From IMG/VR virus record IMGVR_UViG_3300023184_000026, positions 233,259 to 297,258 of that record: 64,000 nt of DNA; one strand, written 5' to 3'. The notes below the pieces were generated by a model, which worked only from the letters and a program-made list of their open reading frames with translations, was not told the origin of the DNA and did no database searches. Below are positions 15,129 to 51,140 of the stretch, piece by piece; positions within the stretch are counted from its first letter, which is position 1, and every line of letters starts with the position of its first letter. A program made the position numbers and the translations under genes.

Positions 15129-15695
15129 ATGAAAAGAAGCGAACTAAAACAATTGATCAGAGAAACGATTGAAGAGCAAATGATCCAAGAATCAGAAGCC
15201 GTTGACAACTTGATAAAACATATCCAAGCATTGTCAAAAGAAGAACAGGGAATTCTTCAAAATAAATTGACCAACTTGTTCAAAACATCAAAGTCTGGTT
15301 CCTTGCAGGACGCATATAATGAGCTTGCAAAAAATGGTAAGATAGTTATCATGCGCAGCGAAAAAAATAGAAATCAATTGATGGGATTTTTACAGTATAA
15401 AGATCAATTTTTGAACGACGAAAAATGCATAACCAGTAAAGAATACGTAAAATATAATGCAAACGCATTTGCAGAAGAATATCCAAACCTTGCGTTTGCG
15501 TTTAAAAATAATCCAGAATTGATGATTCCGTCGGTAGGTCTTGATGACGAAAGAGTTCCCAGCCCGCTCAGAGGACATGGCACTTCTATGAAAGACCAAA
15601 TAAGGGGTATCACGGGGTCTTGGAAAAAAAGACTTGGTGGGGCAGACATAAAAGTGGAACTTGATAAAAATCTTGAGCGCGACATGCCGAAGTAA
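15129..15695 (+). CDS. Hypothetical protein with putative capsid-targeting leader
   Basis: N-terminus MKRSELKQLIRETIEE is nearly identical to that of 41129-41440 (MTKSQLKQLIRETIND); followed by its own terminator. Confidence 0.6.
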   Translation: MKRSELKQLIRETIEEQMIQESEAVDNLIKHIQALSKEEQGILQNKLTNLFKTSKSGSLQDAYNELAKNGKIVIMRSEKNRNQLMGFLQYKDQFLNDEKCITSKEYVKYNANAFAEEYPNLAFAFKNNPELMIPSVGLDDERVPSPLRGHGTSMKDQIRGITGSWKKRLGGADIKVELDKNLERDMPK

Positions 15696-15737
15696 AAGCG
15701 CCGATATTATAACTTCTTAACAGCATTATCGGTTCAT

Positions 15738-15765
15738 AAACCCGCCAAAATACGGCGGGTTTTTT
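15738..15765 (+). terminator. Rho-independent terminator
   Basis: AAACCCGCC-AAAATAC-GGCGGGTTT stem-loop followed by a T run, downstream of 15129-15695. Confidence 0.85.
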
Positions 15766-15770
15766 ATTGG

Positions 15771-15798
15771 TTGACTGATTGAATGTTTTGTGTATAGT
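15771..15798 (+). promoter_or_regulatory. Sigma70-like promoter for the primase/Mre11-Rad50 operon
   Basis: TTGACT (15771-15776), 16-nt spacer, TATAGT (15793-15798); right after a terminator and 10 nt before the primase ATG. Confidence 0.6.
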
Positions 15799-15808
15799 GA
15801 CTATGTAA

Positions 15809-16780
15809 ATGTCGTCGCTAAAAACATCAGAACTCACAATTTTAGTAAATAATGTTCTAAAAGACACAGGACGACTGCGTAAAGGAAATAATTTACAATA
15901 TCATTGTCCAAAATGTCATCATCGCAAGCGAAAATTGGAAGTGTGTCTTGATGCTCCAAATGCTTGGCATTGTTGGACATGTAATATAAAAGGCAGAGGA
16001 TTATATTGGTTGTTGAAACTTGCACAAGCCACGCAAGAACAGTTCAACAAGTTGGAATCTCTTGTAGGAGCACATGTTTCTAAAAATAGTTTATCAGAGT
16101 TTGATAAAAAAATTGCGTCACTAACTTCAAATAAAGTATATGAAGATTATAGTGAAATATTATGTTTGCCAGATGAGTTTAAAAGTTTGGCGGAAAATGA
16201 TGCTAGTATAGAATATCGCATTGCATTGAACTATGCAAAAAAACGCAAACTATCATTTTGTGATATTATAAAATACAACATTGGATATTGCAGCAAAGGA
16301 CCATTTGCCAATCGTATTGTATTTCCGTCATATGATAAAAACAATAACTTAAACTTTTATAGTTGTCGCAGTTATTATGATGATGGTTACAAATACAAAA
16401 ACAGCGAGTTTAGTAAAAATATTGTAGGATTTGAAAACCTTGTTGATTTTGATTTTCCAATTTATTTATGCGAGGGTGCTTTGGATGCCATCTCAATAAA
16501 AAGAAATGCAATTCCACTTTTTGGAAAAACTTTGAGCGCAAAACTAAAAGCAACAATTGTACAAAGCAAATGTCCAGAAGTGAATATTGTGTTGGATGAT
16601 GATGCATTGAATAATGCAATTCGCATCGCAGAATATATAAACTCTATTGGTAAAGTATCCAAGTTGATACAACTGCAAGGCAAAGATCCAAATGTTTTGG
16701 GTTTTGCTGCAACAATGGAAAAGATTAGAAAAACAGATGTGCTTGACTTTAGAGCACTGACCATGCTAAGATTGGAATAA
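15809..16780 (+). CDS. dnaG: DNA primase (Zn finger + TOPRIM)
   Basis: CPKCHH...HCWTC zinc-binding domain; LCEGALDAISI and VLDDDA TOPRIM motifs. Confidence 0.88.
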   Translation: MSSLKTSELTILVNNVLKDTGRLRKGNNLQYHCPKCHHRKRKLEVCLDAPNAWHCWTCNIKGRGLYWLLKLAQATQEQFNKLESLVGAHVSKNSLSEFDKKIASLTSNKVYEDYSEILCLPDEFKSLAENDASIEYRIALNYAKKRKLSFCDIIKYNIGYCSKGPFANRIVFPSYDKNNNLNFYSCRSYYDDGYKYKNSEFSKNIVGFENLVDFDFPIYLCEGALDAISIKRNAIPLFGKTLSAKLKATIVQSKCPEVNIVLDDDALNNAIRIAEYINSIGKVSKLIQLQGKDPNVLGFAATMEKIRKTDVLDFRALTMLRLE

Positions 16781-16783
16781 CAT

Positions 16784-19990: not shown

Positions 19991-19994
19991 GTCA

Positions 19995-20002
19995 TATTTA
20001 TA
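19995..20002 (+). promoter_or_regulatory. TATTTATA putative late-promoter motif
   Basis: 22 nt before ATG 20025. Confidence 0.55.
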
Positions 20003-22277: not shown

Positions 22278-25200
22278 ATGGACATTTCTATAAAAAACCT
22301 AAAAAAGTATATTTTTGAGCCAAAAACAGAGTCACTGCGTCTAAAAAGAGCCAATGAAATACTAAGTCAGAACATGGTCATCACCGAAAAGGTAGATGGA
22401 ACAAAACTAACATTGGTACGTACACAGCAAGTTGATAAAGCAGATTATACCAAGAATTGGGTTGTGGCATATAAAGGAACTGTATTGTATGCCAAAGAGT
22501 TTGCTCATTTAAATGATAAAGAAAAGGGTGATATATCTCAATCTTCTGTTGGCATTGGTCAATATTCCATGATATTTGATCATTTGTCCAAGATAAACAA
22601 TAAGATTAACAGTATTCCAAAGAGCACTGAGTTTAGCGTTGAGTTTGCTCAAAACAAAGACACATTAACTCGTACATATGTCAACAAGGGTGGCTTGTTC
22701 TTGAGAAGTTATGGTGAAGTGCAGTATCGTGTGGTTGGTGGAGATTTGCATACCATTCCGAAACAAGAAATAACAGACTACAAATCTGTGAAAAAGATGG
22801 CAGACTTGTTGGAAATATCATCATTTCCCATATTCTTTCAAGGAAAACTCAGCAAGGAAAATCTGCTGAAGAATCCTTTATTTGGATCAAAACTAACAAA
22901 TGTTGATTGGACCAATCCGACTGATGTTGTAACAAAATTTTCGGAGGCTATTCTGGCTGTTCCATCTACATTGGGTGGCACAACAGAAGGTGTGGTAATG
23001 AAGCTTGATAATGGAGAGTTCTTCAAGTTGGTGCAAGCCGATCAATATGATGCTGGAGTTCGTGGTGCAAAGAAGGACGCATATAAACTTGAACCAGAAG
23101 CCGCTTCAGCATACTTTCAACAAATCAGAGCATTGATACAAAATATTTTTGCTGCAATTGGTACTGAAGGAAAATCCGAAGAAGACGTTATTTCAGATTC
23201 AAATTTTTATGTTGCCAAGAATCAACCAAAGTTAAAAAAGTTCTTTGATGCTCTAAAACAGATTGCTGGTGACAAAAAGAATATTGTTCAAATCAAAGAT
23301 GATATTCATGATACAATTCGTTTGATGACATCCAAACAAGGTCTGTTGGGATCAACCAACAAAACGCTTGGTCTTATTCCAATTGCTGGCAAGCCATTGC
23401 ACATTGGTCATTGGAAGCTTATTGAAAAAGCAGCCAATGAAAATGATCGAGTCATTGTTTATACATCATCTTCCGACAGAATAAAGAAGGGTGAGTTTCC
23501 TATAAAGGGCGATGACTTTGTAAAACTATGGAGTGATGTGTTTATTCCATCTTTGCCAAAAAATGTAAAAGTAAAGTTTGTTGATTCTCCTGTTCGAGCT
23601 ATTATGCATGAACTTGGATGGTTGGAACAAAGATTGACTCAAGACGCCGCAGATATGCCAACCATAAATTTGTATTCTGACAAAGATGATGTTGAAATAA
23701 ACTTCAAAGACGAAGATTTAAAAAAGTATCCAGAGTTGTTGGCTGCTAATAAAATTAAAAAAATTGGTGTTGAAAGAACTACCACAGTGAATGTAAGTGG
23801 CACAAAAATGCGTGAATTTTTGATGAACAATGATAAAGAATTATTCTTGAAAAATCTTCCACCGGTCGGCAACAAAGACAAAGAAGAAATTTGGAATACT
23901 CTCATAGCAAACAAGCCAGAGCCGGTATCAGAAGTTAATCCATATATAAACTTTGCTGAGGAAGTTATAAATGAAATGGAAAAAGAAATGTTTAATGAAG
24001 GTGGTTGGAGATCTACTGCCACACAATCAACTATTATAACTCCAAAAAAAGTATCAAATATTTTGAGTGCAATGGATAAATTTGTATCAGAATTCAATTC
24101 ATATTCAAATCTTCCTCCAATAAAATCCAATGGACCGGTAGGTTCAGCAATGTATTATAAACAAGATTTGGAAAAAGATGATGTAGAATATGGTGATATA
24201 GATATTCAAATTATATTACCAGAAGAAACTAATGATAGAACATCACAACTAGCATCTAATAAAAAATATTCGGAAAAGATTATTCAATTTATTCAAGAAA
24301 AAAAACCAAGTTATATATATCCAAACTTTCAAGACGAAGACTTTGGTACGGGATATTTAATATTCAACGTTGGTGGTGAAAAAATTCAAGTTGATTTAGT
24401 TTTGTCATATAAAGTATCAGCAGAATGGACAAAAATTAGAACAACTCCGGAAAAAGGACTAAAAGGATTTGTTACTGGAAATCTATTGAGTGCATTATCC
24501 GATGCTCTTAATGTTGTGTTGGGATCAAACACCAATCCGTATGTAAATACGATAGATAATAAAGTTGCGTCATCTCTGATTAAAACAAACTCAAAGCATG
24601 TGTTCTTTAATCCAAATCAAGTATTTTTGGATATATTGAAGTTCTATGGCAATCTTGCTGGCGTTTCAAAAATAAATTCATCATTATTACAAGGTCATTA
24701 TGGATTGGATGCAAATGATCCATCATTAAAGAAAAAATGCGAAACCGTGGTTGCTTTGAGTAAAGCACTTGATAATAATAGAGCATTTGATAATGGAGTT
24801 GTTGTATCAAAAAATGGAACAACATTTAAATCCAGAGAAGAATTTGTAAAATATGTGCTGGATACATTCATAAAAAATATGAAATCGGCCAGCACTGCAA
24901 AAAAATTAGAAAAAGCAGAAACACCAGAAGCTATGAAAAATATTGAAAAGATAAAACGTGACGCAAATCTTGGTATAGAACTGGCCAAGCAACTTATTCG
25001 TGAAGAAATTGCATTATTGAATGAATCCGGTCAATCTGTTGCTGCTGTAGATGACAAAACGTCAAAGACCGTAAATGGTCAACCAGCCCAAGCCACCACC
25101 AAACTCAAGATTGTTGATCCACAAGGTAAAGACATTCGTTCTTCTGTATCTGCCGACATAAAAGAACTTATATATGCACTAAATAATAAGGTGGGTTTTT

Positions 25201-36144: not shown

Positions 36145-36531
36145 ATGGAATTGCAGCAGTTTATACCGTCAGATCAAATTATTTTAGCTATTGCCGAAAA
36201 AGTTAAAAAAAAATTTCCGTCCTCAAATGGCAAGTGTGAATTTATGTCGCAAGAACTGGTTTCTGATTTGAATAAAAAAGGAATACGATCCAATCATGTA
36301 ATGGGAATATTCACACTTGATGAACCCGGTGCATGGAAATACAGATCAGAAGAGGATGAAGAATTTGATGAGTATCAAGTTAATCATGATTGGGTAAATG
36401 TGGAAGGAAAAATATTAGACATATCCGCCGATCAATTTAAAAAGTACGTAAATCAAAATATACCAAATGTAGTATATATAAGATACTCAGATCCATTATA
36501 TAAATATTACACGGAGATGGGTTATGTCTGA
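36145..36531 (+). CDS. Small transglutaminase/papain-like fold protein
   Basis: Candidate triad GKCEF (C 36235), NHDWV (H 36385), ILDIS (D 36418). Confidence 0.5.
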   Translation: MELQQFIPSDQIILAIAEKVKKKFPSSNGKCEFMSQELVSDLNKKGIRSNHVMGIFTLDEPGAWKYRSEEDEEFDEYQVNHDWVNVEGKILDISADQFKKYVNQNIPNVVYIRYSDPLYKYYTEMGYV

Positions 36532-38240: not shown

Positions 38241-40202
38241 ATGGCAAACACAAAAGATTTATTTGGTAGACTGAAGAAAATGTTCAGCACGGACGTTATC
38301 GTTCGTAATGTGGGTGGCAAGAAGCTTAAGATAATAGATACCGATGAAATTCAGTATGCAACGGATAGGAATAGTTTGCGTGATCGTTTTAATAGATTAA
38401 GAAGCAGTACATACAATTTGCATAATCGCGATATGTCTATGGCATATCAAGCAAGTCGTTTGGAACTGTTCAGAGATTATGATGTTATGGACATGGACCC
38501 AATCATTGCCTCTGCATTGGACATTTACTCAGATGAGTGCCTCGTCCCGTCAGAATATGGCAAAGTTCTCACCATTAAATCTAATAATGAAAATATTAAA
38601 AAGATTTTAGAAAATTTGTTTTATGATATTTTGAATGTTGAATTCAACATGTGGAGTTGGACAAGAAACATGTGTAAGTATGGAGATTTTTTCTTGAGGT
38701 TGGAAATATCACCAGAATATGGTGTATTTCTTGTACATCCAATCAGTCCATATGAATTGACTCGCATTGAAGGTAGCGATCCAAAAAATCTAAACTATGT
38801 CAAATATCAACATGATGGTATGGGTGGTGGTATGGAATATGAAAACTTTGAAATTGCTCATTTTAGATTATTGAGCGATAGTAATTTCTTACCATATGGT
38901 AAGAGTATGATTGAGCCAGCACGTCGTGTGTGGAAGCAATTGAGCCTCATGGAAGATGCCATGTTGATTCATCGTATCATGCGTGCGCCAGAAAAGCGTA
39001 TTTTTTCCATAGACGTAGGTAATATTCCACCGGCGGATATTGATGCCACGATGCAAAAAATAATGGGACAGGTAAAAAAGATGCCGTATATTGACGAGAG
39101 AACTGGAGATTATAATCTTCGTTTCAATTTAAACAACATGGTTGAAGATTTTTATCTACCGGTTCGTGGCAGCGACAGTGGAACAAAAATCGATACATTG
39201 CCAGGTATGGAATTTACTGGTATAGATGACTTGGAATATGTTCGTAATAAAATGATGGCGGCGCTAAAGATTCCAAAGGCGTTTCTGGGATATGAAGAAG
39301 GATTATCTGGCAAAGCCACGTTGGCTGCTGAAGATGTTCGATTCTCACGCACCATTGGTCGTATACAGCGCATTTTAGTTTCAGAACTTACTAAAATTGC
39401 CATTGTACATTTGTATGTACAAGGATATCAAGATTCATCGCTTGTTGATTTTGAACTAGAACTAAGTAATCCATCCACAATTTTTGAACAAGAAAAGTTG
39501 GAGATTTGGAAAAATAAAATTAATCTGTCCACGGACATGATGGAAAGTACCATGTTTAGTAGAAATTGGATATATGAAAATGTATTCAAACTGTCTGAGG
39601 ATGAGATTGAATATATCAAAAAAGATGTTGTGCAGGATAAAAAAGATATTTGGAGATTTAAACAAATTGAGGAAGAAGGAAGTGATCCAGCATTTGCCTC
39701 AAGTGAAGAAGGTGGTGGGGGTGACGGTGGAGATATGGGCGGTGGGGGTGGTGAACTTCCAGACCTCGGCGGTGGTGAAGACTCTGGTGGTGGAGGTGGA
39801 GACTCTGGCGGCGAAAACGCTGGTGGTGAAGAAGCCGGTGGTTTGCCACCTTTGGAAGAAGAAAAGAACGCAGATGAACCAGTTCTGGACGAAGAAACTC
39901 GCAAAGAGCGCGAACTCGGAATTCGTCCAAGTCAGGACGGAAAAAAAGAAGAATATAGTGACACATTCACAAAAACACGCGGCGAAGATATTCTTGGCAA
40001 CGGACAAAACAAAGAAAAGTCTAAATCTGATCGCAGAACGACTCATATATATAGAGGAGGCGCTTTGAGCATGGACGAAGATTTGAAACGTATAAAAAAG
40101 TCATTGATGGACAAGTATAATAATAAAAACAAGAAAATAATAACCGAAAAAAAATCTATTATGGATGAGTCTAATATAATTGATGATGATAAACCACTCT
40201 AA
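38241..40202 (+). CDS. gp20: Portal protein, T4 gp20-like, with acidic Gly-rich C-terminal tail
   Basis: YGKSMIEPARRVWKQLSLMEDAMLIHRIMRAPEKRIFSIDVGNIP; EDFYLPVRG..IDTLPG; LKIPKAFL. Confidence 0.95.
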   Translation: MANTKDLFGRLKKMFSTDVIVRNVGGKKLKIIDTDEIQYATDRNSLRDRFNRLRSSTYNLHNRDMSMAYQASRLELFRDYDVMDMDPIIASALDIYSDECLVPSEYGKVLTIKSNNENIKKILENLFYDILNVEFNMWSWTRNMCKYGDFFLRLEISPEYGVFLVHPISPYELTRIEGSDPKNLNYVKYQHDGMGGGMEYENFEIAHFRLLSDSNFLPYGKSMIEPARRVWKQLSLMEDAMLIHRIMRAPEKRIFSIDVGNIPPADIDATMQKIMGQVKKMPYIDERTGDYNLRFNLNNMVEDFYLPVRGSDSGTKIDTLPGMEFTGIDDLEYVRNKMMAALKIPKAFLGYEEGLSGKATLAAEDVRFSRTIGRIQRILVSELTKIAIVHLYVQGYQDSSLVDFELELSNPSTIFEQEKLEIWKNKINLSTDMMESTMFSRNWIYENVFKLSEDEIEYIKKDVVQDKKDIWRFKQIEEEGSDPAFASSEEGGGGDGGDMGGGGGELPDLGGGEDSGGGGGDSGGENAGGEEAGGLPPLEEEKNADEPVLDEETRKERELGIRPSQDGKKEEYSDTFTKTRGEDILGNGQNKEKSKSDRRTTHIYRGGALSMDEDLKRIKKSLMDKYNNKNKKIITEKKSIMDESNIIDDDKPL

Positions 40203-41128: not shown

Positions 41129-41440
41129 ATGACAAAATCACAACTAAAACAACTAATCAGAGAAACAATAAATGATTATGAATCCACACAGCCACAAAAG
41201 GTTGTTGGAAAATACATCTATTTTGTTGATTCTAAAGAGTTGTATAGTTTAAAGCCGTATAAACTTGTCAAAGATGGTGGATGCGATATATCTCTGTCAA
41301 ATAATTGGACAAAAGCAACAGTGATGCAAGGACAAGATGTTAGAGATATGGGAATCGACAGCGTTACAGACATATCGGCTTGGTATATTGTAAACAATGC
41401 TCCATCAGATCATGCATATACTGCATATATTGGAAAATAA
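41129..41440 (+). CDS. Small protein with putative capsid-targeting leader
   Basis: MTKSQLKQLIRETIND N-terminus; in the head operon. Confidence 0.6.
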   Translation: MTKSQLKQLIRETINDYESTQPQKVVGKYIYFVDSKELYSLKPYKLVKDGGCDISLSNNWTKATVMQGQDVRDMGIDSVTDISAWYIVNNAPSDHAYTAYIGK

Positions 41441-41443: not shown

Positions 41444-41935
41444 ATGAACGACACCAAGCAAATCATCCGTGAATTAGTTGAAGAAGTCATTGAAGAAATG
41501 ACATCAACGGGTGCTGTTGCTGGTTATCAAACACCAGCAGCATTTCGTGGTCATAAAAGCAAAAAGAAATCAGCAGAACGTAGTATGCCAGGTGGCAAAG
41601 TTGTAGGCAAAGAAGACACAGATAATACAACAGTTGGCGAAGGTGAAACACTAACATTGCGTCGTGATATTGGTATTATGGAAGGTCGCAGCCGCTATCG
41701 TAATTTTAAAGATAGTGACATGATGAAAAATCATGCTAAAATTTCGTATGGTATCAATCAAGCAAAAAAAATGCTTGGTGAAGTTGAATATCTATTAAAC
41801 ATCTGTGAACGTCTCAAGACCGAAGCAGATGTTCCAGCCACAAGTTTGTGGGCACGTACTCAACCAGACATGAAAGAAATTCATGGTCGATTGAAAGAAA
41901 TTGCCAAAAGAATCAACAGAATGGGAAAAAAATAA
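41444..41935 (+). CDS. Putative prohead core/internal protein
   Basis: MNDTKQIIRELVEEVIEE N-terminus; internal IME-GR site; in the head operon. Confidence 0.6.
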   Translation: MNDTKQIIRELVEEVIEEMTSTGAVAGYQTPAAFRGHKSKKKSAERSMPGGKVVGKEDTDNTTVGEGETLTLRRDIGIMEGRSRYRNFKDSDMMKNHAKISYGINQAKKMLGEVEYLLNICERLKTEADVPATSLWARTQPDMKEIHGRLKEIAKRINRMGKK

Positions 41936-41940: not shown

Positions 41941-42489
41941 ATGAATCTAACAGACATTGCTAAAAAGATTTTGAAAGAGGACAGCTGGGGGAACAAAACG
42001 TCCGATGCTGGTGGTATGTCACTTGGACGAACACCAACTGCCGTTCAACCACCACCGGCTCAAAGTGGAAATATTGTTGATATTTCTCAATCGTTCAGAA
42101 ACTTCAAACTTGAATTAGAAAAGCAAGAAGATGTCACTATCAAGAAGTTTACCGAACAACTCAAGAAACAATTTCTAAAAAAAATAGCTACCGTAAAAGC
42201 CTCCAAAGGCAGTATTGGTCAAATTGAGAAAGAATATACTATCACAGTCACCAACGTCGAGACTCGTTATATGAAAGATAAGTACTATGTAGTATTTGTC
42301 GGAAAAGAAGGCAATGCTGGCGAGTCTGAATATTATCTAGATGATTCACAAATTAAAGTAAATCCGGCAACATCGCAGACCTCTGCGGGGGCGCAACAGT
42401 CTGCACTGAAGAATGTTGGTGGCGTTATTCCAATGCAGCCAAGCAATCAACCGGTACAAACCGCAAAAAACATTCTTCCACAAGGATAA
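41941..42489 (+). CDS. Putative internal head protein
   Basis: Start placed at ATG 41941 (MNLTDIAKKILKE-DS) to avoid a long overlap with the upstream gene. Confidence 0.6.
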   Translation: MNLTDIAKKILKEDSWGNKTSDAGGMSLGRTPTAVQPPPAQSGNIVDISQSFRNFKLELEKQEDVTIKKFTEQLKKQFLKKIATVKASKGSIGQIEKEYTITVTNVETRYMKDKYYVVFVGKEGNAGESEYYLDDSQIKVNPATSQTSAGAQQSALKNVGGVIPMQPSNQPVQTAKNILPQG

Positions 42490-42494: not shown

Positions 42495-43121
42495 ATGAGC
42501 AAACAACTATTAGTAGATTTTATTCCATTTGACATCACTCCGCAGATGCTTACAGAAGCAAAAGCAAATACTGGTGGTCCATTGGTTCTCAAAGGTCCAT
42601 TACAAAAAGCCGGTGAAAAGAATCACAATGGTCGTGTATATCCACGCGAAGTATTGGAGCGTGAAGTTGAAAAATATCAACAAATCATCAAAGAACGTCG
42701 TGCTTTGGGTGAACTTGATCATCCAGAATCCAGTATCATCAATCTAAAGAATGTATGTCACAATGTTACAGAATGTCACTGGGAAGGTGATACTGTGGTT
42801 GGTACTATTGAAATTCTAACCACACCAAGTGGTAATATTGCAAGAGATTTGATTAAAAACAATATTCGCATTGGTATTAGCAGTCGCGGTTTGGGAAGTG
42901 TTCGCAATGTGAATGAAAATACTGTTGAAGTACAAGATGACTTTGAACTATTGTGTTTTGACCTTGTATCTTCACCAAGCACACGTGGTGCTTATATGAA
43001 TCTTGCCGAAGGCATAAATCGTGAAAAACAATTGATTGGTGGCAATCAAGATCGCAAAGACATCAACAAATATTTAAAAATTGAAAATATCATTCGTGAT
43101 ATATTATCAGAAACCCGTTAA
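42495..43121 (+). CDS. gp21: Prohead core protease, T4 gp21-like
   Basis: KNHNGRVYP, ALGELDHP (His), GISSRGLGS (Ser), FDLVSSPS (Asp). Confidence 0.93.
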   Translation: MSKQLLVDFIPFDITPQMLTEAKANTGGPLVLKGPLQKAGEKNHNGRVYPREVLEREVEKYQQIIKERRALGELDHPESSIINLKNVCHNVTECHWEGDTVVGTIEILTTPSGNIARDLIKNNIRIGISSRGLGSVRNVNENTVEVQDDFELLCFDLVSSPSTRGAYMNLAEGINREKQLIGGNQDRKDINKYLKIENIIRDILSETR

Positions 43122-43127: not shown

Positions 43128-44255
43128 ATGAACGAAGCAACAATACCAAACGAAACAGAAATCAAGAAAATTGTGCAATATCTTGCTATAGAAGCCACCA
43201 AGTACCAAGATATGATTGGTCTTGATGCTGCACACGACATTGATATTTCTGGGCTAGAATCTGCAATTGAAGATTCCAACAACAAGAAGATTCTAAATTT
43301 TTGGAACAAATTGAGCAGCAAGCAGAAGAACGAAATACATGATATGGTGTCAACATATTTGTATAATAAAGCACTGAAAGCAGACCCAGATTATTATGGT
43401 GACGACCAACCAACTCCAGTAAATTACAAACTTTCATCAAAAACAACAACTCCAACCAAGGCTCCTGCTGGTGGTAATGAAGCCAAGTTGATAAAATCTC
43501 TTGCAAAAAAAGCAGAAGATTGGATGAACTATGTTGATGTAGATTCTCCAGAAAACATATCTTATGATGATTTCGAGGAATTTGTCATAAACGATCCAAA
43601 AAACAAAAAGCTTCAAGCATTTTGGAATTCAATGGGAAATAAAAAACAAGAAAATTTGTTCTATAAAGTAGTTGATGTTTTGGAAAAAAAATATGGAGAT
43701 GGCGATGACATGTATGAGGGTCGCAATCTTTCCAACATCGCAAAGAAGATGATCAAAGAAAATAAATCAACACCTCTTATGCTAAATGGCAAAGAAGTTG
43801 ATGAAAAATCAATTGAAATTGACGGAGTTGATCGTAGAGATTATCCAGATTTTTCTGATGCTTATATCTCTGCTGCAAATTATATGGACGGTACACCACT
43901 CAGCGATAAAGAAATTGAAGAGTTGGATGCTCAAAATAATGAATTGGTTCATGAAAAAATTCAAGACGATCAATTGTATATGCAAGAAGGTGAAGAAGAA
44001 AAACTTGGCAGTTCTGCATATGACAAAGAAGACAAAGAAGAAAGAGGGCAATACTCCAACAAACCAAAGATGGCTGGTATTACATTTTTCAATGTTCCGT
44101 CTGGTAAAGAATCAATTGCTACACAATATGGTTTGACTCAATTCAAGAGTGGCAAATGGGGAATCAAACATAAAATTGGTAGAGACTATACTAGTGCAGT
44201 TTCTGCGGCTGAAAGAATACTTGGTAAAGGTCGTTATTGGCAACCAAATAACTAA
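43128..44255 (+). CDS. Modular hypothetical protein with an internal ~70-aa duplication; putative internal head protein
   Basis: NKKILNFWNKLSSKQK vs NKKLQAFWNSMGNKKQ; internal MYE-G, IAKKMIKE-N and MQE-G sites; DYPDFSDAYI module. Confidence 0.6.
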   Translation: MNEATIPNETEIKKIVQYLAIEATKYQDMIGLDAAHDIDISGLESAIEDSNNKKILNFWNKLSSKQKNEIHDMVSTYLYNKALKADPDYYGDDQPTPVNYKLSSKTTTPTKAPAGGNEAKLIKSLAKKAEDWMNYVDVDSPENISYDDFEEFVINDPKNKKLQAFWNSMGNKKQENLFYKVVDVLEKKYGDGDDMYEGRNLSNIAKKMIKENKSTPLMLNGKEVDEKSIEIDGVDRRDYPDFSDAYISAANYMDGTPLSDKEIEELDAQNNELVHEKIQDDQLYMQEGEEEKLGSSAYDKEDKEERGQYSNKPKMAGITFFNVPSGKESIATQYGLTQFKSGKWGIKHKIGRDYTSAVSAAERILGKGRYWQPNN

Positions 44256-45167: not shown

Positions 45168-45617
45168 ATGAATACACTCAAACTCAAATATTTAATTGAA
45201 AGAATTGTTGACGAGCAATCAAATAGTGTTCATCAAGAAACCGAATGGAGTAATGAAGAGAAGAAAGTCGCACTTGAGGCTATTGGTCGATATAATGAAT
45301 ATGGTGGTCAACTTCGCCGCGAATATAATTTAATGGAAATTGCGCACACTCTGGCAAAAATTACAGAATCTGCTGAAAAATTTACTATGACCGAAACCGA
45401 GGACTGGTTTGATAAACGAACTGTTTCTGAAAATATGAAACAACTTCGCAAAGTTTCAGATGAATTTAATAAGTTGGCCAAAGATGCACATGTTATGCAG
45501 CAGCGCATGGAGTCTTTGTATGAAGATGCTGGGCATTTACTGGGTCGTTATTTTGAGATTAATGATCTCAATGAGGGACTTGCACCTGCAATTTCCAAAA
45601 TTAAAAAGGCTGAATAA
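45168..45617 (+). CDS. Helical hypothetical head protein
   Basis: MNTLKLKYLIERIVDE N-terminus; C-terminal LNE-G. Confidence 0.6.
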   Translation: MNTLKLKYLIERIVDEQSNSVHQETEWSNEEKKVALEAIGRYNEYGGQLRREYNLMEIAHTLAKITESAEKFTMTETEDWFDKRTVSENMKQLRKVSDEFNKLAKDAHVMQQRMESLYEDAGHLLGRYFEINDLNEGLAPAISKIKKAE

Positions 45618-45761: not shown

Positions 45762-47147
45762 ATGTCAGATCTATTAAAACAAGCTATCGCAGACGCAAAA
45801 GCGGTGCGTGCTACTGCCCTAGCCAATGCCAAAGCTGCATTGGAAGAAGCATTCACACCAAAAATACAAAGCATGCTGGCTGAAAAGCTAAAGCAAGAAA
45901 TTGAAGGGGACGAAGAAGCTCCCGAAACCACACAAGCCCCAGCACCGGAAGCTCCATTGCCAACCGACGATATGGGTGGCGAAGAAGTTCACGCCGATGC
46001 CGCGCAAGATATGGCTATGGCAGCGGGCGGCGCACCAGAAGGTCACGCCGATGCTGCTCAAGACGCAGCTATGGGTGCTCCAGTTGAAGAACCATCGGCT
46101 GAGATGTCGTCCACACCTGTTGGTGACGAAGCTGAATTGTCCGAACTGGAAGGCGAAATTGGCGAAGACGCTGGATATATGGCTGAAGGCGAAAAGGCTT
46201 CTGGTGATTACAAGAAGACCACCAAGGGTCACAATACCGAAGATCCGGGTAAAAATATGGTAAAGTCGGTTGGAACCGCAATCGGCGGAACCAAGGGTTC
46301 TTTATCAGCTACCAAGAAAAACGCAAAAGCGTCTTCAGACTACACCAAGACCACAACTGGTCACAAGACTGATGACCCACAAGGTCAAGGAAATGAAGTA
46401 TCCAAAGGTGGATATGACAATGACACAGCAGCCTTGAAGGAAAACGAAGAAGTTGATGAAGCTTCTTTAGATGAAATCCTAAAGGAATTGGAAGACGGCT
46501 TAAATAACGATAATGACATGCAAGAAATGCACGGTGTAGAAACCACAGAAGCCCACGAAACGGGGGCCGAAGAAGAAATTGACCTAAACGAACTTCTATC
46601 CGAAACGGACGACGATGACGATGACGAAGAAATCGAAGAAGGCAAACTTCCAAAAGGTCTGGCCGATTACCAAGCTAAGAAAGCTGGTAAATCAAAAGAC
46701 GACGATGAAGAAAAAGAAACCGTCAAAGAAAATATTTCGTTGAAAAAGGAACTAGCAGAATACCGTAGCGCAGTCGAATATCTACGGACCCAGATCAATG
46801 AAGTGAATCTGCTCAATGCAAAGCTTCTCTACACGAACAAATTGTTCAAACAGACTAGCCTAAACAATGCGCAGAAAATGAAAGTAATCGAAAGCTTTGA
46901 TCTCACGAAATCAATTCGTGAAGCAAAGCTTGTTTATGCTACACTGGCCGAATCATTTAATTTCGGTGGAAAAAAGACCGTACAAGCTGCTCCTGTAAAG
47001 AAGCAAATGTCTGGTACAGTCAAAACCATCACCGAAGGACTTGCCAGCAAACCAATTGCATCAACAAAGCCTACAAAACCAATAGTTCTTACAGAAGGTG
47101 CCGAAATGGCCAACCGCTTTAAGAAGTTGGCGGGTATTCGCAGTTAA
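45762..47147 (+). CDS. gp22: Prohead scaffold protein, T4 gp22-like
   Basis: Acidic low-complexity centre, C-terminal coiled coil (EVNLLNAKLLYTNKLFK), directly upstream of the MCP; many L/I-x-E sites. Confidence 0.8.
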   Translation: MSDLLKQAIADAKAVRATALANAKAALEEAFTPKIQSMLAEKLKQEIEGDEEAPETTQAPAPEAPLPTDDMGGEEVHADAAQDMAMAAGGAPEGHADAAQDAAMGAPVEEPSAEMSSTPVGDEAELSELEGEIGEDAGYMAEGEKASGDYKKTTKGHNTEDPGKNMVKSVGTAIGGTKGSLSATKKNAKASSDYTKTTTGHKTDDPQGQGNEVSKGGYDNDTAALKENEEVDEASLDEILKELEDGLNNDNDMQEMHGVETTEAHETGAEEEIDLNELLSETDDDDDDEEIEEGKLPKGLADYQAKKAGKSKDDDEEKETVKENISLKKELAEYRSAVEYLRTQINEVNLLNAKLLYTNKLFKQTSLNNAQKMKVIESFDLTKSIREAKLVYATLAESFNFGGKKTVQAAPVKKQMSGTVKTITEGLASKPIASTKPTKPIVLTEGAEMANRFKKLAGIRS

Positions 47148-47179
47148 AAAATCAACAACAAAAATTACAGGATAATATT

Positions 47180-48793
47180 ATGTCAATTAAATCATTACTA
47201 ACTGAGACAACCAATCCAATGGTTAAGCTCATGACCGAAACTCGCGGTCTTGTCTCCAAGTGGGAAAAGACCGGACTTCTAGAAGGCATCAAGAGCGACA
47301 TGGAAAAGTCACACATGTCCATCCTTCTGGAAAATCAAGCAAAACAACTGATCGACGAAGCAACCCGCACGGGTACTTCATCGAACTCCGAACAATGGGC
47401 TGGCGTTGCTCTCCCACTAGTTCGCCGTGTTTTCGCAGAAATCGCCGCGAAGGAATTCGTGTCGGTTCAACCAATGAATCTTCCTTCTGGTCTGGTGTTC
47501 TATCTGGACTTCAAGTATGGTTCTGGCCAATCTGGCAAGCCAAGTTTCAAGGACAATTCTTTGTTCGGTGGAACAGGTACTAAATTGGGTTCTACCGACA
47601 GCGCAACCAACGGTCTATATGGCCAAGGTCGTTTCGGTTACACCATCAATGATGTTCTCGCAACACCAGCTATGGTCACAGGTTCTCTTAGCACAGCAAA
47701 TGCTCCAACTTGGGAAAACATCAACTTCACTGAAGAACTGAGTGCTTCATTGTCAAACGGCGGAATCCAATCCGTTACTGTATCGTTGAGTGGAACAAAC
47801 TTCGACGCCAATGGCGCTCGTGCGTTTACCGTTTCTGGTTCGGGCATCGTCGATTTCTATCCTGCGTTTACACGAGTTTCTGGTACAAGCGTAATCTTTT
47901 ACGTTTCTGGATCAGCCATCAGTGGAAACTCTCTGGTTGGATATCACAAACAACCGGGCGACGCAAGTCGTGGCGACTTCGAAGATAAAGGTGACGGATT
48001 GCCAAACACCACGGGTGTTGCGGACGACATCGGAATTCCAGAAGTTAACTTGGAACTGAAGAGCGAAGCTATTGTAGCTAAGACCCGCAAGCTGAAAGCC
48101 GTCTGGACACCAGAATTGGCCCAAGACTTGAATGCATACCACAGCATCGATGCTGAAGCCGAATTGACGGCTCTTCTATCGGAATACGTTTCAATGGAAA
48201 TCGACCTAGAAATCCTTGACATGTTGATCACCAATGCTCCGGCGACCACAACCGACTTCTGGTCTGCACGCATTGGATCTGAATATGACGTGACAACCCG
48301 TCTGTTCAAGGACACAGCTGCTAACCGCACTGCATATGTCAAGAGCACATGGTTCCAAACCTTGGGCAACAAGATCCAAAAGGTCTCGAACAAGATTCAC
48401 CAATTGACACTGCGCGGTGGTGCAAACTTCCTAGTTTGCTCCCCAGACGTTGCTACAATCATTGAATCCATTCCAGGCTTCAGCACCAACACGGACGGCG
48501 ACCAAGCCAAGTTCGCAATGGGTGTGGCCAAAGTTGGCGCTCTGAGCAACCGTTGGACAGTATACAAGAACCCATACATGACAGACAATGTTATGTTGGT
48601 AGGTTTCCGTGGAACAAACTTCCTAGAAACCGGCGCTGTGTACGCTCCATACATCCCACTGATTCAAACACCGTTGGTGTATGACCCAGTGAACTTTACA
48701 CCACGTCGTGGCGTAATGACACGTTATGCCAAGAAGATGATAAGACCTGAGTTCTACGGCAAGATCATCATTGGCAACTTAAACGAAGTCTAA
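47180..48793 (+). CDS. gp23: Major capsid protein, T4 gp23-like
   Basis: FVSVQPMNLPSGLVFYLDFKY; AKTRKLKAVWTPELAQDL..H.IDAEAEL; YAPYIPL..FTPRRGVMTRYA. Confidence 0.97.
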   Translation: MSIKSLLTETTNPMVKLMTETRGLVSKWEKTGLLEGIKSDMEKSHMSILLENQAKQLIDEATRTGTSSNSEQWAGVALPLVRRVFAEIAAKEFVSVQPMNLPSGLVFYLDFKYGSGQSGKPSFKDNSLFGGTGTKLGSTDSATNGLYGQGRFGYTINDVLATPAMVTGSLSTANAPTWENINFTEELSASLSNGGIQSVTVSLSGTNFDANGARAFTVSGSGIVDFYPAFTRVSGTSVIFYVSGSAISGNSLVGYHKQPGDASRGDFEDKGDGLPNTTGVADDIGIPEVNLELKSEAIVAKTRKLKAVWTPELAQDLNAYHSIDAEAELTALLSEYVSMEIDLEILDMLITNAPATTTDFWSARIGSEYDVTTRLFKDTAANRTAYVKSTWFQTLGNKIQKVSNKIHQLTLRGGANFLVCSPDVATIIESIPGFSTNTDGDQAKFAMGVAKVGALSNRWTVYKNPYMTDNVMLVGFRGTNFLETGAVYAPYIPLIQTPLVYDPVNFTPRRGVMTRYAKKMIRPEFYGKIIIGNLNEV

Positions 48794-48821
48794 TCTTTAG
48801 ACTGAAAATCAATGCTATCAG

Positions 48822-48852
48822 AGGGGCCACTCTTTCGAGTGGCCCCTTTTTT
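48822..48852 (+). terminator. Rho-independent terminator after the MCP gene
   Basis: AGGGGCCACTC-TTTC-GAGTGGCCCCT perfect 11-bp stem followed by a T run. Confidence 0.92.
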
Positions 48853-48906
48853 GTCAAAATATTTTGATGTTTGAGATTTATGATTGATATATATAGATAT
48901 AATTCT

Positions 48907-49659
48907 ATGGATAAATCAGGCATATATAAAATAACAAACATCATAAATGGCAAATTCTACATCGGATCTTCTATTGATATATCACGCAGATTAAATGCTC
49001 ACAAATCAATGTTGATAAATAACACACATCGAAACCCGATATTGCAGCGGGCATGGAATAAATATGGCTCTGACAAATTTACATTTGAGATAATAGAAGA
49101 ATGTGCCAATGACCAAAAAATTTGTTTTGAACGAGAACAATATTACTTGGATTTGTTGAAACCATATTTGGCAATTGGATATAATATAGAAACGAAGGCT
49201 TCGGGGGGTGATACTTTTACTCTCAATCCAAACAAAGAAGCTATACGAGAAAAGATGCGTATATTGAACGCGGGTGATAAGAATGGAATGTTTGGCAGAA
49301 CTCACAATGATTCTACAAAAAATGGAATGAAAAACAAAGCAAAGGGTCGTTTTTCTCTTGAATGGTTTGTAGAACGAAATGGTCAAGAATTTGGTACTCA
49401 AAAATATCAAGAACGTCGTAAAATGCTATCATCTCGTAAAATCAATTATAAACACGATAATGGGCTAAAAGGAAAATCACGTGTGGTTGAATCTACCAGA
49501 GGTTCTAGTGTAAGTCGTGGAAGAAATGCACTAAAAGGTAGAAAAGAAGAATTTTTACTTGATATATCTAATCAAGAAATATCCAGTAAACAGATTGCTG
49601 ATAAATATACAATATCAACTGCGGCAGTAAAGTATCACAGAAACAAGTTGAAAAAGTAA
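48907..49659 (+). mobile_element. Free-standing GIY-YIG homing endonuclease (Seg-like) with NUMOD3-like and HTH segments
   Basis: SGIYKITNIINGKFYIGSS..RL..H..REQYYLD; NGMFGRTH; C-terminal KQIADKYTISTAAV; start placed at ATG 48907. Confidence 0.85.
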
Positions 49660-49684
49660 CCGTATATATAATATATATTGTACC

Positions 49685-50479
49685 ATGCTTATGAAGAAAA
49701 TATATTACTATTCATTGTGTTTGTTAACATTGGTTACTGTTTTGGTTGCCAATCCAATTGATGACAAGGCATCTCAATTTGTTGTGAATGGTGCGCCAAT
49801 CAGCAAAATTGTAAAAGATACTCAGTATATAATCAAAAAGAATTATGCTATACATTATCGCTATGATACCAAAACAGCTGAGTATGTTGTAGAACATCCA
49901 ACACTTGAAAAGATTAATGGAAAATCAAAACGTAAAGATGATTTTAGACCAGATCCAGAAATAGCAAAGCAACATCAATCATTATTAAGTGATTATTCCG
50001 GTCAACCATTTGATCGCGGCCATCTTGTGCCTGCTGGAGACAATACTCAAAATGATGATGTTATGAGTGAAAGTTTTTTTCTTTCTAATATGGTTCCTCA
50101 AGTTCCAAATCATAATAGAGGAATTTGGAAACAATTGGAAACTGCTGTCAGAAACTGGGTAATTGAAGGCAAAGATGTGTATGTTATAACTGGCACATTT
50201 TATAACAAAGGATATAAAGAAATTGGTAATAACAAAGTTGGTATTCCAGATTATATGTGGAAAGTTATTGTAGATGCAAAGTCAAATAAAGCTATTGCAT
50301 TTATGTTTCCCAATGCTCCACTACCCGTTGAAGACCTTCATAAATATATTGTATCCATATCAGAGATAGAAGTCAAGACTGGAATAAATTTCAATCCAAA
50401 ATTATCAGAAAAACAACAAAATGAATTGGAAAAGTCAAAAGCAGATCAAAAAGATTGGTCTAGCTTAACAAAGAAATAA
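49685..50479 (+). CDS. DNA/RNA non-specific endonuclease (NucA/Serratia family) with N-terminal signal peptide
   Basis: FDRGHLVPAGD, SFFLSNMVPQ, NRGIWKQLE motifs; MKKIYYYSLCLLTLVTVLVA leader. Confidence 0.9.
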   Translation: MLMKKIYYYSLCLLTLVTVLVANPIDDKASQFVVNGAPISKIVKDTQYIIKKNYAIHYRYDTKTAEYVVEHPTLEKINGKSKRKDDFRPDPEIAKQHQSLLSDYSGQPFDRGHLVPAGDNTQNDDVMSESFFLSNMVPQVPNHNRGIWKQLETAVRNWVIEGKDVYVITGTFYNKGYKEIGNNKVGIPDYMWKVIVDAKSNKAIAFMFPNAPLPVEDLHKYIVSISEIEVKTGINFNPKLSEKQQNELEKSKADQKDWSSLTKK

Positions 50480-50480
50480 T

Positions 50481-51140
50481 TTAACCAGCTGCTTTAAATA
50501 CAGCAGCGTTCCAGTCCATACGTTTTTTTACACCACGATTGTTTGTGCTGCGATATTCTCCGTGGTTTAAATATTCCTTTGCAGCATCAGCAAACTTGTT
50601 TTGGTTCAACAACTTTATTGTTTTTGGTCCTATATCACCGCGATATAATGCATTGATTGTTGCAATTCTCACGGTCAATGGCAAACTATCAAATTTTTCT
50701 ATATGTTTTTTAGCAACATCAATCTTTTTATTAGCGTCTTTTTCAAGTAATTTCAATGCATCATCGTCAGTTATTCCCTTGCTAAAATCTTCATTTGGTT
50801 GAATTTTGTGACCATAAGCAATTGTGTCACTGCCACCTTCAACACTTTTATGTGGAAACCACAATTTCTTGACTTTATTATATCCACCTTTTGGATTGTT
50901 GATGTTGTTTTCAAATTGCTTGATTATATTCACAGCGCGAGTATTTAAGTTGCCTGTGTCTCCAGTATCGCTAAAATCAATATTATGCTGAGTATATGGC
51001 TTTCCTGCACCATCCCCTGCTGGCTGTGCATATGCATGTTGTGCGGGTGGCATAACAAACGTTACTGGAGGCGGTTGGTCTGCCATGGCTTCTTTTAATT
51101 GAATTTCATGCAACAAATCTCTCAGCTTTATTATACTCAT
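50481..51140 (-). CDS. GH24/T4-lysozyme-like muramidase with N-terminal extension
   Basis: IIKQFE...EGGSDTIAYGH..GITDDDALKLLEKD..FADAAKEY; N-terminus MSIIKLRDLLHEIQLKE-A; the only substantial minus-strand gene. Confidence 0.75.
   Translation of the reverse strand: MSIIKLRDLLHEIQLKEAMADQPPPVTFVMPPAQHAYAQPAGDGAGKPYTQHNIDFSDTGDTGNLNTRAVNIIKQFENNINNPKGGYNKVKKLWFPHKSVEGGSDTIAYGHKIQPNEDFSKGITDDDALKLLEKDANKKIDVAKKHIEKFDSLPLTVRIATINALYRGDIGPKTIKLLNQNKFADAAKEYLNHGEYRSTNNRGVKKRMDWNAAVFKAAG

What the first reader, a model, noticed from the sequence alone, without database searches (positions are those of the whole stretch)
15129..51140. Shared K-x-L-I-x-E leader and hydrophobic-x-E sites mark a set of putative capsid-packaged, protease-matured proteins
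Seen: MKRSELKQLIRETIEE (15129), MTKSQLKQLIRETIND (41129), MNDTKQIIRELVEEVIEE (41444), MNLTDIAKKILKE (41941), MNTLKLKYLIERIVDE (45168), MSIIKLRDLLHEIQLKE (51140, minus strand) and MSIKSLLTE (MCP). Internal copies: LAKQLIREEIALLNE (24981-25025) and LSNIAKKMIKE (43128 gene). Established: T4 gp21 cleaves after (L/I)-x-E, and T4 internal proteins carry an N-terminal capsid-targeting sequence. Inference: this amphipathic helix is the equivalent address label, recruiting unrelated cargo genes scattered over 36 kb, including one (15129) that sits between RuvC and primase.
Basis: partly seen in the sequence, partly recalled or inferred. Interest (0 to 1): 0.7.

Follow-up and report, generated by a model that had tools for sequence, protein, structure and literature searches.

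The report
Shared capsid-address leader on phage proteins
An uncultured 297-kb freshwater phage with a T4-type head puts the same short N-terminal peptide on about two dozen unrelated proteins; the peptide follows the rules of phage T4's capsid-targeting sequence and recurs in hundreds of related environmental phages, so it probably marks proteins that are loaded into the head and trimmed by the head protease, though this is not proven.

Summary
The 297-kb genome (the window is its last 64 kb) has at least 13 A-type leaders (MKKSELKxLIKE...), about 5 B-type leaders (MIKLKDLLxE) and several head-module variants. They are attached to bodies that share no similarity.

All 22 fit one grammar, hydrophobic(P7)-x-x-hydrophobic(P4)-hydrophobic(P3)-x-Glu(P1), with P1 at residues 9-16. 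This is the layout of T4's tested capsid-targeting sequence MKTYQEFIAE.

- The phage encodes a T4 gp21-type (S77) protease, a gp20-type portal and a gp23-type capsid protein.
- The capsid protein carries the same KQLIxE|A motif at its likely maturation site.
Those contigs are fragments of large S77-encoding phages.
- Some cargo bodies are cell-wall hydrolases. The window's 50481-51140 gene is a T4-lysozyme-fold enzyme.
- In lake metagenomes the 15129 body is swapped, and two breakpoints fall at the end of the leader.

Packaging and cleavage are inferred, not shown.

Verdict: a new variant of a known kind (T4 capsid-targeting sequence and propeptide).

The parts
15129..15695 (+). A-type leader protein (188 aa). 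The leader is residues 1-12/16 (15129-15176), MKRSELKQLIRE|TIEE|. The body is an ORFan and varies between strains.
   Evidence: 42.9 bits. The body has one homologue cluster only, no Pfam or PHROG hit and no atlas lead. The body is absent from 4 lake metagenomes while the flanks are present; joints lie at 15164 and 15175.
41129..41440 (+). A-type leader protein (103 aa), MTKSQLKQLIRE|T. It sits in the portal-to-protease gap, where T4 has gp67 and gp68.
   Evidence: 36.9 bits. Close relatives in IMG/VR loci L039, L078 and L102 start MKKSELKQLIRETIN.
41444..41935 (+). Head-module protein (163 aa) with a variant leader, MNDTKQIIRELVEE|VIEE|MTSTGAV. Likely a prohead core protein.
   Evidence: The orthologue in Flavobacterium phage immuto (L001 8445-8666) keeps the leader and the ...EEM|STTGAVGGY junction.
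41941..42489 (+). Head-module protein (182 aa) with a variant leader, MNLTDIAKKILKE|D.
   Evidence: It has the highest hydrophobic moment of the set.
42495..43121 (+). Prohead protease, Peptidase_S77 (T4 gp21 family). Its C-terminus ends in a grammar-conforming site, IIRDILSE|TR.
   Evidence: Pfam E 3.3e-25. PDB 5JBL, E 3e-12. T4 gp21's His (in ELNHP) and Ser (in GVSSRG) are conserved. C-terminal site.
43725..43763 (+). Internal string NLSNIAKKMIKEN inside the 43128-44255 gene. At best a possible internal cleavage site.
   Evidence: It shares only 13 residues with the 41941 N-terminus (E 0.02) and nothing beyond that.
45168..45617 (+). Head-module protein (149 aa) with a variant leader, MNTLKLKYLIERIVDE|Q.
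   Evidence: The orthologue in Microcystis phage Mel-JY01 (L002 5706-6170) keeps ...YQKIVQEVVREVIAE and the body motif EAI.R.NEYG.
45762..47147 (+). Acidic scaffold-like protein (461 aa) between the protease and the capsid protein. Presumed docking partner for the leaders.
   Evidence: Synteny and N-terminal similarity with immuto and Mel-JY01. Three grammar sites, at residues 41, 242 and 281. No Pfam or PHROG hit. The role is inferred.
47180..48793 (+). Major capsid protein (gp23 family). It has a leader-like N-terminus, MSIKSLLTE| (47180-47206), and a probable maturation site, KQLIDE|A, at residues 55-60 (47342-47359).
   Evidence: Pfam Gp23 E 1.8e-77. T4 gp23* aligns from residue 71. NQAKQ[LI][IV]xE|A is conserved in Mel-JY01 and immuto.
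50481..51140 (-). B-type leader (MSIIKLRDLLHE|) followed by a roughly 45-residue disordered linker and a T4-lysozyme-fold (GH24) domain.
   Evidence: 144 homologues, nearly all with the leader. The leader is as conserved as the catalytic domain. AF2: helix 7-13, disordered to about residue 60, fold at 62-219. Foldseek finds T4 lysozyme, probability 1.00. PHROG tail-lysozyme hit.
24981..25025 (+). Internal string LAKQLIREEIALLNE in the 1306-aa protein 22278-26198. Judged to be a chance match.
   Evidence: The number of internal regex hits is close to the shuffle expectation. It is not above 8 bits on the PSSM.
1..223 (+). 3' part of a leader-bearing gene that starts 229 bases before the window (genome 233029; MKKNELVDIIRTIVKEEV).
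38241..40202 (+). T4 gp20-type portal. Context that defines the T4-type head module.
   Evidence: Pfam Portal_T4 E 1.9e-70.

Best explanation
The leaders are T4-type capsid-targeting propeptides. A short N-terminal helix with hydrophobic residues at P7, P4 and P3 and Glu at P1 docks the newly made protein onto the scaffold core of the assembling prohead. The capsid protein's own N-terminus and propeptide end carry the same motif. After shell assembly the gp21-family protease (42495-43121) cuts after the Glu at residue 9-12, often with a back-up site at 16 or 20. The leader peptide leaves the head and the body stays inside, to be ejected with the DNA.

Because the label is short and self-contained, bodies are exchanged freely behind it. 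That gives about two dozen unrelated cargo genes scattered through the genome.

Shown here: the leader families, the grammar, the protease family, the association with S77 phages and the body swapping.
Inferred: docking, cleavage, packaging and ejection.
For: 1. Leader families are far above chance and sit at true ORF starts.
2. With the first 20 residues removed, no two bodies are similar. Three tandem genes share an identical first 38 nt but have unrelated bodies.
3. The constraint is on the peptide. Synonymous sites vary, upstream DNA is not conserved, and host-contig GC ranges from 23 to 54%.
4. T4 facts: gp21 cuts after L/I-X-E. The capsid-targeting sequence is MKTYQEFIAE, with residues 4 and 7 needed for targeting and 8 and 10 for processing. 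All 22 leaders have hydrophobic residues at the equivalent P7, P4 and P3 and Glu at P1.
5. Controls for the grammar within the first 16 residues:
   - This genome: 25 observed against 6.7 expected (p 3e-8).
   - immuto: 20 against 4.2.
   - G025: 16 against 4.9.
   - T4: 17 against 3.7, recovering IPII, IPIII, Alt and gp24.
   - Staphylococcus phage K, which has no S77 protease: 8 against 5.3, not significant.
6. In 98 non-redundant IMG/VR A-type proteins the unconstrained positions 14, 17, 18 and 20 are conserved (I/V, V/I, L, E). Information content then falls to background, which marks where the leader ends.
7. S77 protease occurs in 16 of 37 A-type records (3 of 3 complete) and 13 of 25 B-type records. 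That is more than expected even if every fragment came from an S77 phage. The apparent exceptions are fragments that lack or truncate the head module.
8. KQLIxE|A lies at the conserved capsid-protein propeptide end.
9. Bodies include virion-type cell-wall enzymes: GH24 here, and Hydrolase_2, M23 plus tail lysozyme and OmpA elsewhere.
10. The 15129 body is replaced in related lake strains, with breakpoints at leader codons 12-16.
11. About 10 leader genes carry the TATATTTATA-like upstream motif that also precedes the portal, adaptor and tail genes.
Against: - There is no virion proteomics, N-terminal sequencing or expression-timing data for this phage or any relative.
- Some leader-bearing bodies are NUDIX, DEDD exonuclease, zeta/AAA_33 kinase or RimK ATP-grasp enzymes. 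No T4 precedent exists for packaging these.
- The grammar alone is not specific. Most of its T4 hits are not known head proteins.
- Mel-JY01 shows no significant enrichment.
- The leaders have no sequence homology to the T4 sequence, only the same layout.
- Protease-plus-leader co-folding gave no answer.
- The upstream motif is not restricted to structural genes.
Confidence: 0.6

Rival explanations
1. The leaders are protease-removable propeptides, but they are not a head-packaging address. The S77 protease, or another late protease, trims them to switch late enzymes on or off. Alternatively, the proteins go to another virion part (tail or baseplate) or to the membrane-bound assembly site rather than into the head.
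For: - Every leader contains L/I-x-E sites.
- Several bodies are enzymes that would plausibly act in the cytoplasm or periplasm.
- The lysozyme body's best PHROG match is a baseplate-hub tail lysozyme.
Against: - In T4 the residues equivalent to P7 and P4 are needed for targeting, not for cutting. They are the most conserved leader positions here.
- gp21-type proteases are active inside proheads.
- The capsid protein and the head-module proteins share the same N-terminal layout.
Confidence: 0.15
2. The leader is a general N-terminal helix with a role unrelated to the head protease. Possible roles are oligomerisation, binding to a phage or host chaperone or protease (a stability tag), or a favoured translation start in an A+T-rich host that does not use Shine-Dalgarno sequences.
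For: - The leaders are Lys-rich and A/T-rich at the 5' end, and the upstream regions are A/T-rich with no Shine-Dalgarno motif.
- Metabolic-type bodies carry the leader.
- T4 N-termini match the loose grammar more often than the known head proteins can explain.
Against: - A translation effect cannot explain 12-20 conserved residues, including fixed hydrophobic and Glu positions, when synonymous sites vary freely and GC ranges from 23 to 54%.
- It does not explain the link with S77 phages.
- It does not explain the identity with the capsid-protein maturation motif.
- It does not explain the sharp end of conservation at Glu20.
Confidence: 0.2
3. The resemblance is a compositional or chance artefact of Lys/Glu/Leu/Ile-rich N-termini.
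For: The short regex alone has about 17 chance matches in the genome.
Against: - 18 N-terminal matches against 0.58 expected.
- 34-45 bits against a 15-bit control maximum.
Confidence: 0.01

Closest known systems
[quoted passage not shown]
   Same: - An N-terminal leader of 10-16 residues shared by otherwise unrelated, fast-evolving proteins.
- Hydrophobic residues at P7 and P4, hydrophobic P3 and Glu at P1.
- A gp21-family protease and a T4-type head module in the same genome.
- A hypervariable cargo locus with the leader retained.
   Different: - No sequence homology to MKTYQEFIAE.
- Two distinct leader families (A, 12-20 residues with tandem sites; B, 10 residues).
- About 25 candidate cargo genes rather than 3-4, dispersed over 297 kb.
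- Bodies are not uniformly small and basic (pI 4.8-9.9) and include enzymes.
- The same leaders are conserved across hundreds of uncultured phages.
- Function is untested.
Short N-terminal propeptides of T4 gp24 and Alt, and the 65-residue gp23 propeptide, all removed by gp21
   Same: The T4 control scan recovers gp24 (MAKINELLRE|) and Alt with the same grammar. The window's capsid protein has a leader-like N-terminus and a conserved [LI][IV]xE|A site just before the gp23 core.
   Different: The exact cleavage positions here are predicted, not measured.
Propeptide processing in giant phages phiKZ, 201phi2-1 and SPN3US
   Same: Many head and ejection proteins are processed after Glu by a distant gp21 relative, and propeptides carry redundant sites.
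   Different: The giant-phage sequence logos are separate from T4's. From my own recollection their consensus is S/A/G-x-E, not L/I-x-E. They also have an inner body and a non-gp23 capsid protein. Here P3 is Leu/Ile and the head module is plainly T4-type.
Encapsulin cargo-loading peptides
   Same: A short portable peptide that recruits unrelated cargo into a shell with an HK97-type fold.
   Different: From my own knowledge, encapsulin peptides are usually C-terminal, are not cleaved, and there is no protease or DNA packaging. No encapsulin shell gene is involved here.

Membership tests
T4-type capsid-targeting sequence / gp21 propeptide system | The genome encodes a gp21-family (Peptidase_S77) prohead protease with its catalytic residues | tested here: met
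   Pfam PF03420 E 3.3e-25. The His and Ser of T4 gp21 are conserved in the alignment.
T4-type capsid-targeting sequence / gp21 propeptide system | T4-type head module (gp20 portal, gp23 capsid protein, T4-type terminase) | tested here: met
   Portal_T4 E 1.9e-70 and Terminase_6N E 2e-14. Gp23 E 1.8e-77.
T4-type capsid-targeting sequence / gp21 propeptide system | The same short N-terminal leader on proteins that are otherwise unrelated | tested here: met
   PSSM 34-45 bits against a 15-bit control. No body-to-body similarity at E<0.01.
T4-type capsid-targeting sequence / gp21 propeptide system | The leader ends in the gp21 cleavage motif L/I-x-E | tested here: met
   All 22 leaders have it, with P1 at residues 9-16. 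The motif definition comes from PMC9026906.
T4-type capsid-targeting sequence / gp21 propeptide system | Hydrophobic residues at the targeting positions (T4 residues 4 and 7, that is P7 and P4) | tested here: met
   These positions are nearly invariant in 35 aligned lysozyme-family homologues: I4, L6, L10.
T4-type capsid-targeting sequence / gp21 propeptide system | Sequence homology to the T4 sequence MKTYQEFIAE | tested here: not met
   Only the positional pattern is shared. No residue identity beyond Met1 and Glu at P1.
T4-type capsid-targeting sequence / gp21 propeptide system | The leader is sufficient for encapsidation and is removed in mature heads | not testable with these tools
   This needs virion proteomics or reporter fusions. 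Co-folding of the protease with the leader gave no answer.
T4 internal proteins (IPI-III) as a protein class | Small, highly basic DNA-associated bodies | tested here: inconclusive
   Body lengths are about 60-340 aa and pI is 4.8-9.9. Some are basic and small (139632, pI 9.2), while many are acidic or are enzymes.
GH24 / T4-lysozyme fold (body of 50481-51140) | T4-lysozyme fold and membership of a lysozyme sequence family | tested here: met
   Foldseek against T4 lysozyme: probability 1.00, target-normalised TM-score 0.57-0.64. Distant homologues carry PF00959. Pfam does not hit the window protein directly.
phiKZ-type propeptide system | Small residue (S/A/G) at P3 before Glu (consensus from my own recollection; one search shows only that separate logos exist); inner-body proteins | tested here: not met
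   P3 is Leu, Ile, Val or Met in all leaders.

The most novel reading that the evidence does not exclude
Two leader peptides (MKKSELKxLIKE... and MIKLKDLLxE) may form a shared capsid-address code across a large, mostly uncultured branch of T4-superfamily phages. If so, they mark a large and rapidly exchanged set of head-packaged, host-injected proteins that can be read straight from sequence. That set would include cell-wall hydrolases, NUDIX hydrolases, DEDD exonucleases, zeta-like kinases and many ORFans, some of them likely counter-defence or takeover factors delivered together with the DNA.
Probability: 0.4. Interest if true: 0.8.

Novelty: new variant of a known kind. Interest (0 to 1): 0.62.

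Why it matters
Injected head proteins are a phage's first weapons. T4 IPI*, for example, blocks a restriction system. They are almost impossible to recognise from sequence because they evolve so fast.

A leader that is conserved across hundreds of environmental T4-like phages would let these proteins be listed directly from metagenomes. It would point to new anti-defence and takeover enzymes. It would also offer ready-made tags for loading foreign proteins into non-coli phage heads.

In the paper library I could search I found no description of these leader families.

Tried and rejected
- Co-folding the protease with residues 1-30 of the 15129 protein gave score 0.01, 'no answer'. It is not evidence either way.
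- tblastn of the 25-residue leader against cultured phages found nothing, probably because the query is short and low in complexity.
- Full-text searches for MKKSEL, MIKLKD, Mel-JY01, and capsid targeting plus cyanophage found no description and no proteomics. Papers that mention phage immuto exist, but none looked like a virion proteomics study from its title and abstract.
- Pfam and PHROG on the window's leader bodies found nothing except the lysozyme. The Atlas search on the 15129 body gave no lead.
- G054 (207 kb, called complete) has B-type leaders but no S77 or gp23. It also lacks any T4-type (Terminase_6N) terminase or T4-type portal, so it is a fragment without the head module and not a counterexample.
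- A DNA-level or regulatory-cassette explanation is rejected because synonymous sites vary and the upstream DNA is not conserved.
- Metatranscriptome contigs were too sparse, and came from diverged strains, so they say nothing about expression timing.
- The hydrophobic moment gives only moderate support for an amphipathic helix.

Full report
**What the window is.** The window is the last 64 kb of a single 297,258-bp contig. The same sequence is held by three freshwater or lake DNA metagenomes in full and in part by eleven more, dated 2017-2024. It is therefore an uncultured freshwater jumbo phage.

Its head module is plainly T4-type:
- Terminase_6N at 36524-38179 and Portal_T4 at 38241-40202.
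- Peptidase_S77, the T4 gp21 family, at 42495-43121, E 3.3e-25.
- Gp23 major capsid protein at 47180-48793, E 1.8e-77.

The protease aligns with T4 gp21 and keeps its His (ELNHP in T4, ELDHP here) and Ser (GVSSRG in T4, GISSRG here). By capsid protein, the nearest cultured phages are Microcystis phage Mel-JY01 (58.6%), Flavobacterium phage immuto (55%) and Rhodothermus phage RM378 (38%).

Across my 380 ORF calls for the genome, the pattern [KR]x[LIM][LI]xE occurs 43 times. Eighteen of these start within the first eight residues. Within-protein shuffles give 0.58 on average and never more than 5.

A position matrix built from nine leaders finds further, unseeded copies at 34-45 bits, while the reversed proteome peaks at 15 bits.

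The set is therefore genome-wide. At least 13 genes have A-type leaders (MKKSELKxLIKE[VIM]...) and about five have B-type leaders (MIKLKD[LI]LxE; the window's 51140(-) gene belongs here). The head-module variants at 41444, 41941 and 45168 and the capsid protein's own N-terminus add to this. A B-type matrix trained only on other genomes recovers this genome's B-type genes.

The number of internal regex hits is close to the shuffle expectation. The 24981 string fails the matrix. The 43128 string shares only 13 residues with the 41941 N-terminus (E 0.02).

**The leader is a module, and it is selected as a peptide.** With the first 20 residues removed, none of 22 leader proteins resembles another at E<0.01. 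Three tandem genes (genome 139632, 139859, 140143) share an identical first 38 nt and then diverge completely.

Across 108 distinct leader DNAs from IMG/VR, synonymous positions vary freely. For example Leu9 is CTT, TTA, CTA or TTG, and Ile10 is ATT, ATC or ATA. There is no conserved upstream sequence, and the GC content of the host contigs ranges from 23 to 54%. This excludes a DNA-level cassette or a simple translation-start effect.

**The grammar matches T4's tested targeting sequence.** T4 gp21 cuts after L/I-X-E. The T4 internal-protein capsid-targeting sequence is MKTYQEFIAE. Residues 4 and 7 are needed for targeting and residues 8 and 10 for processing (PMC9026906; 10.1101/2021.01.19.427310). 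Counted back from the cut, these are hydrophobic P7, P4 and P3 and Glu at P1.

All 22 leaders of this genome fit that layout, with P1 at residue 9-16. The B-type leader is the same length as the T4 sequence and has an acidic residue at position 6 as well.

Results for the grammar within the first 16 residues, with internal 16-residue windows as the null:

| Genome | Observed | Expected | p |
|---|---|---|---|
| This genome | 25 | 6.7 | 3e-8 |
| immuto | 20 | 4.2 | 1.5e-8 |
| G025, complete IMG/VR genome | 16 | 4.9 | 4e-5 |
| Mel-JY01 | 8 | 4.5 | not significant |
| T4 (positive control) | 17 | 3.7 | 2.5e-7 |
| Staphylococcus phage K (no S77 protease) | 8 | 5.3 | not significant |

The T4 hits include IPII, IPIII, Alt and gp24. 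Most of the remaining T4 hits are not known head proteins, so the loose grammar alone is not specific. The weight of the argument rests on the two specific leader families.

**The capsid protein carries the same motif.** Residues 55-60 of the capsid protein read KQLIDE|A, ten residues before the point where mature T4 gp23* begins to align. The block NQAKQ[LI][IV]xE|A is conserved in Mel-JY01 and immuto. I read this as the maturation site.

The capsid protein also begins with a leader-like MSIKSLLTE. The protease ends with IIRDILSE|TR, which recalls the C-terminal self-processing reported for gp21.

**The leaders are widespread and travel with S77 phages.** My own rough estimate of the chance expectation is well under one. 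The B-type scan likewise gave 120 stretches, with arrays of up to four leader genes in a row.

In 98 non-redundant A-type proteins, positions the scan did not constrain are conserved: I/V at 14, V/I at 17, L at 18 and E at 20. This is a second copy of the same grammar. Information content then drops to background, which marks the end of the leader.

- Of 37 A-type records, 16 carry Peptidase_S77, including 3 of 3 that are at least 90% complete.
- Among the fragments, 13 carry it, against about 6.9 expected from CheckV completeness even if every one came from an S77 phage.
- For B-type records the count is 13 of 25.

Two apparent exceptions dissolve on inspection. G047 ends just after a T4-type terminase and portal, so its protease would lie beyond the contig end. 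G054 lacks terminase, portal, capsid protein and protease altogether, so it is a fragment without the head module.

**What the bodies are.** The 15129 body is an ORFan. It has one 93%-identical cluster among 5.8 billion proteins, no Pfam or PHROG hit, and no lead from the Atlas.

The 50481-51140 protein has 144 homologues, and nearly all of them start with the B-type leader. Its leader residues carry 3.0-4.3 bits, as much as the catalytic domain and more than the linker. AlphaFold2 gives a short helix at residues 7-13, a disordered stretch to about residue 60, and a confident T4-lysozyme fold. Among cultured phages, its C-terminal part matches only the large virion-packaged proteins of N4-like Vibrio phages.

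Elsewhere in the genome, B-type leaders precede a NUDIX domain and an RNase_T/DEDD exonuclease. In IMG/VR they precede Hydrolase_2, M23 plus tail lysozyme, OmpA, NUDIX, Zeta_toxin/AAA_33 kinases and a RimK ATP-grasp domain. Cell-wall enzymes fit the idea of virion cargo. The metabolic-type enzymes are the main reason for caution.

**Cargo swapping at the leader boundary.** In four lake DNA metagenomes that hold close relatives, the flanks of 15129 are covered at 95-99% identity but the body (15212-15716) has zero depth. The alternative forms are:
- 15164 joined to 15738 (run X5).
- 15175 joined to 15741 with 199 other letters in between (run X16).
- 15058 joined to 15786 with 346 other letters in between (run X7).

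Two of the three breakpoints fall at leader codons 12-16. This is the behaviour reported for internal proteins among T4 relatives: the bodies differ while a targeting-like leader is kept. These are single contigs from metagenomes, so I treat them as supportive rather than conclusive.

**Expression hint.** A TATATTTATA-like motif lies 5-35 nt upstream of 50 genes. These include the portal, a head-tail adaptor homologue and tail or fibre genes, and also about ten leader genes, among them the NUDIX and exonuclease genes. It may be the late promoter. However, it also precedes non-structural genes, and no timing data exist.

**Conclusion.** The most likely reading (about 0.6) is a T4-type capsid-targeting and propeptide system. 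It would have two new, widely conserved leader families and an unusually large and mobile set of cargo genes. Docking, cleavage, packaging and ejection are all inferred.

The rivals are:
- Propeptides that are cut but are not a packaging address (0.15).
- An N-terminal helix with a function unrelated to the protease (0.2).
- Chance (0.01).

I found no description of these leaders in the searchable literature. I rate the finding as a new variant of a known kind.

Noticed in passing
G000 genome 225789-226397 (7.5 kb before the window): An A-type leader gene (IKKSELKQLIREVV...) begins with ATT where ATG is expected. A related IMG/VR contig (L118, 6083) has MKKSELKQLIREVV with ATG. This could be a non-canonical start, a start-codon mutation or a sequencing error.
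   Followed up: partly
G000 genome 24101-25156, 50931-52307, 210870-212603: Three ORFs carry a full leader copy in frame in their interior: at residue 118 (MKKSELKALLKVIV), at residue 296 (MKKEQLKNLIREMIEE) and at about residue 301 (IKLKDLINE). They look like fused cargo genes or polyproteins that the protease could split.
   Followed up: no
whole genome; in the window e.g. upstream of 10819, 38241, 44289, 51140(-), 51227, 57792, 63123: A TATATTTATA-like motif lies 5-35 nt upstream of 50 genes and may be the late promoter. It recalls T4's TATAAATA (from my own knowledge). A separate TTGACT...TATAAA class lies upstream of other genes.
   Followed up: partly
window 48871-49659 and 49685-50479: Directly after the capsid gene sit a GIY-YIG (homing-type) endonuclease and a DNA/RNA non-specific endonuclease (Endonuclease_NS, E 1e-51) with a hydrophobic, signal-like N-terminus.
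   Followed up: no
window 54638-57655: A 1005-aa protein with collagen triple-helix repeats (Pfam E 6.5e-48), in the tail or fibre region.
   Followed up: no
window 22278-26198: A 1306-aa protein with weak RNA-ligase, cytidylyltransferase and NMN-adenylyltransferase-like matches and a conserved C-terminal PHROG domain of unknown function.
   Followed up: no
window 14000-17000: The 15129 locus is hypervariable among lake strains. A 352-nt skip (14202 to 14555, removing the 108-aa gene 14219-14545) is also seen in two metagenomes.
   Followed up: partly
L122-L129 (Flavobacterium phage immuto, whole genome): immuto has its own leader families: MENFDLKKFLVENKLT on four genes, one of them annotated cob(I)alamin adenosyltransferase, and MKKQILSEQF.RMQ.LAGIITE on two genes. 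This suggests lineage-specific address peptides.
   Followed up: partly
L002 6185-6412 (Mel-JY01 head module): A ribosomal protein S21 gene is annotated inside the head module, between the protease and the scaffold-like gene.
   Followed up: no
The labels rest on N-terminal motifs only.
   Followed up: partly
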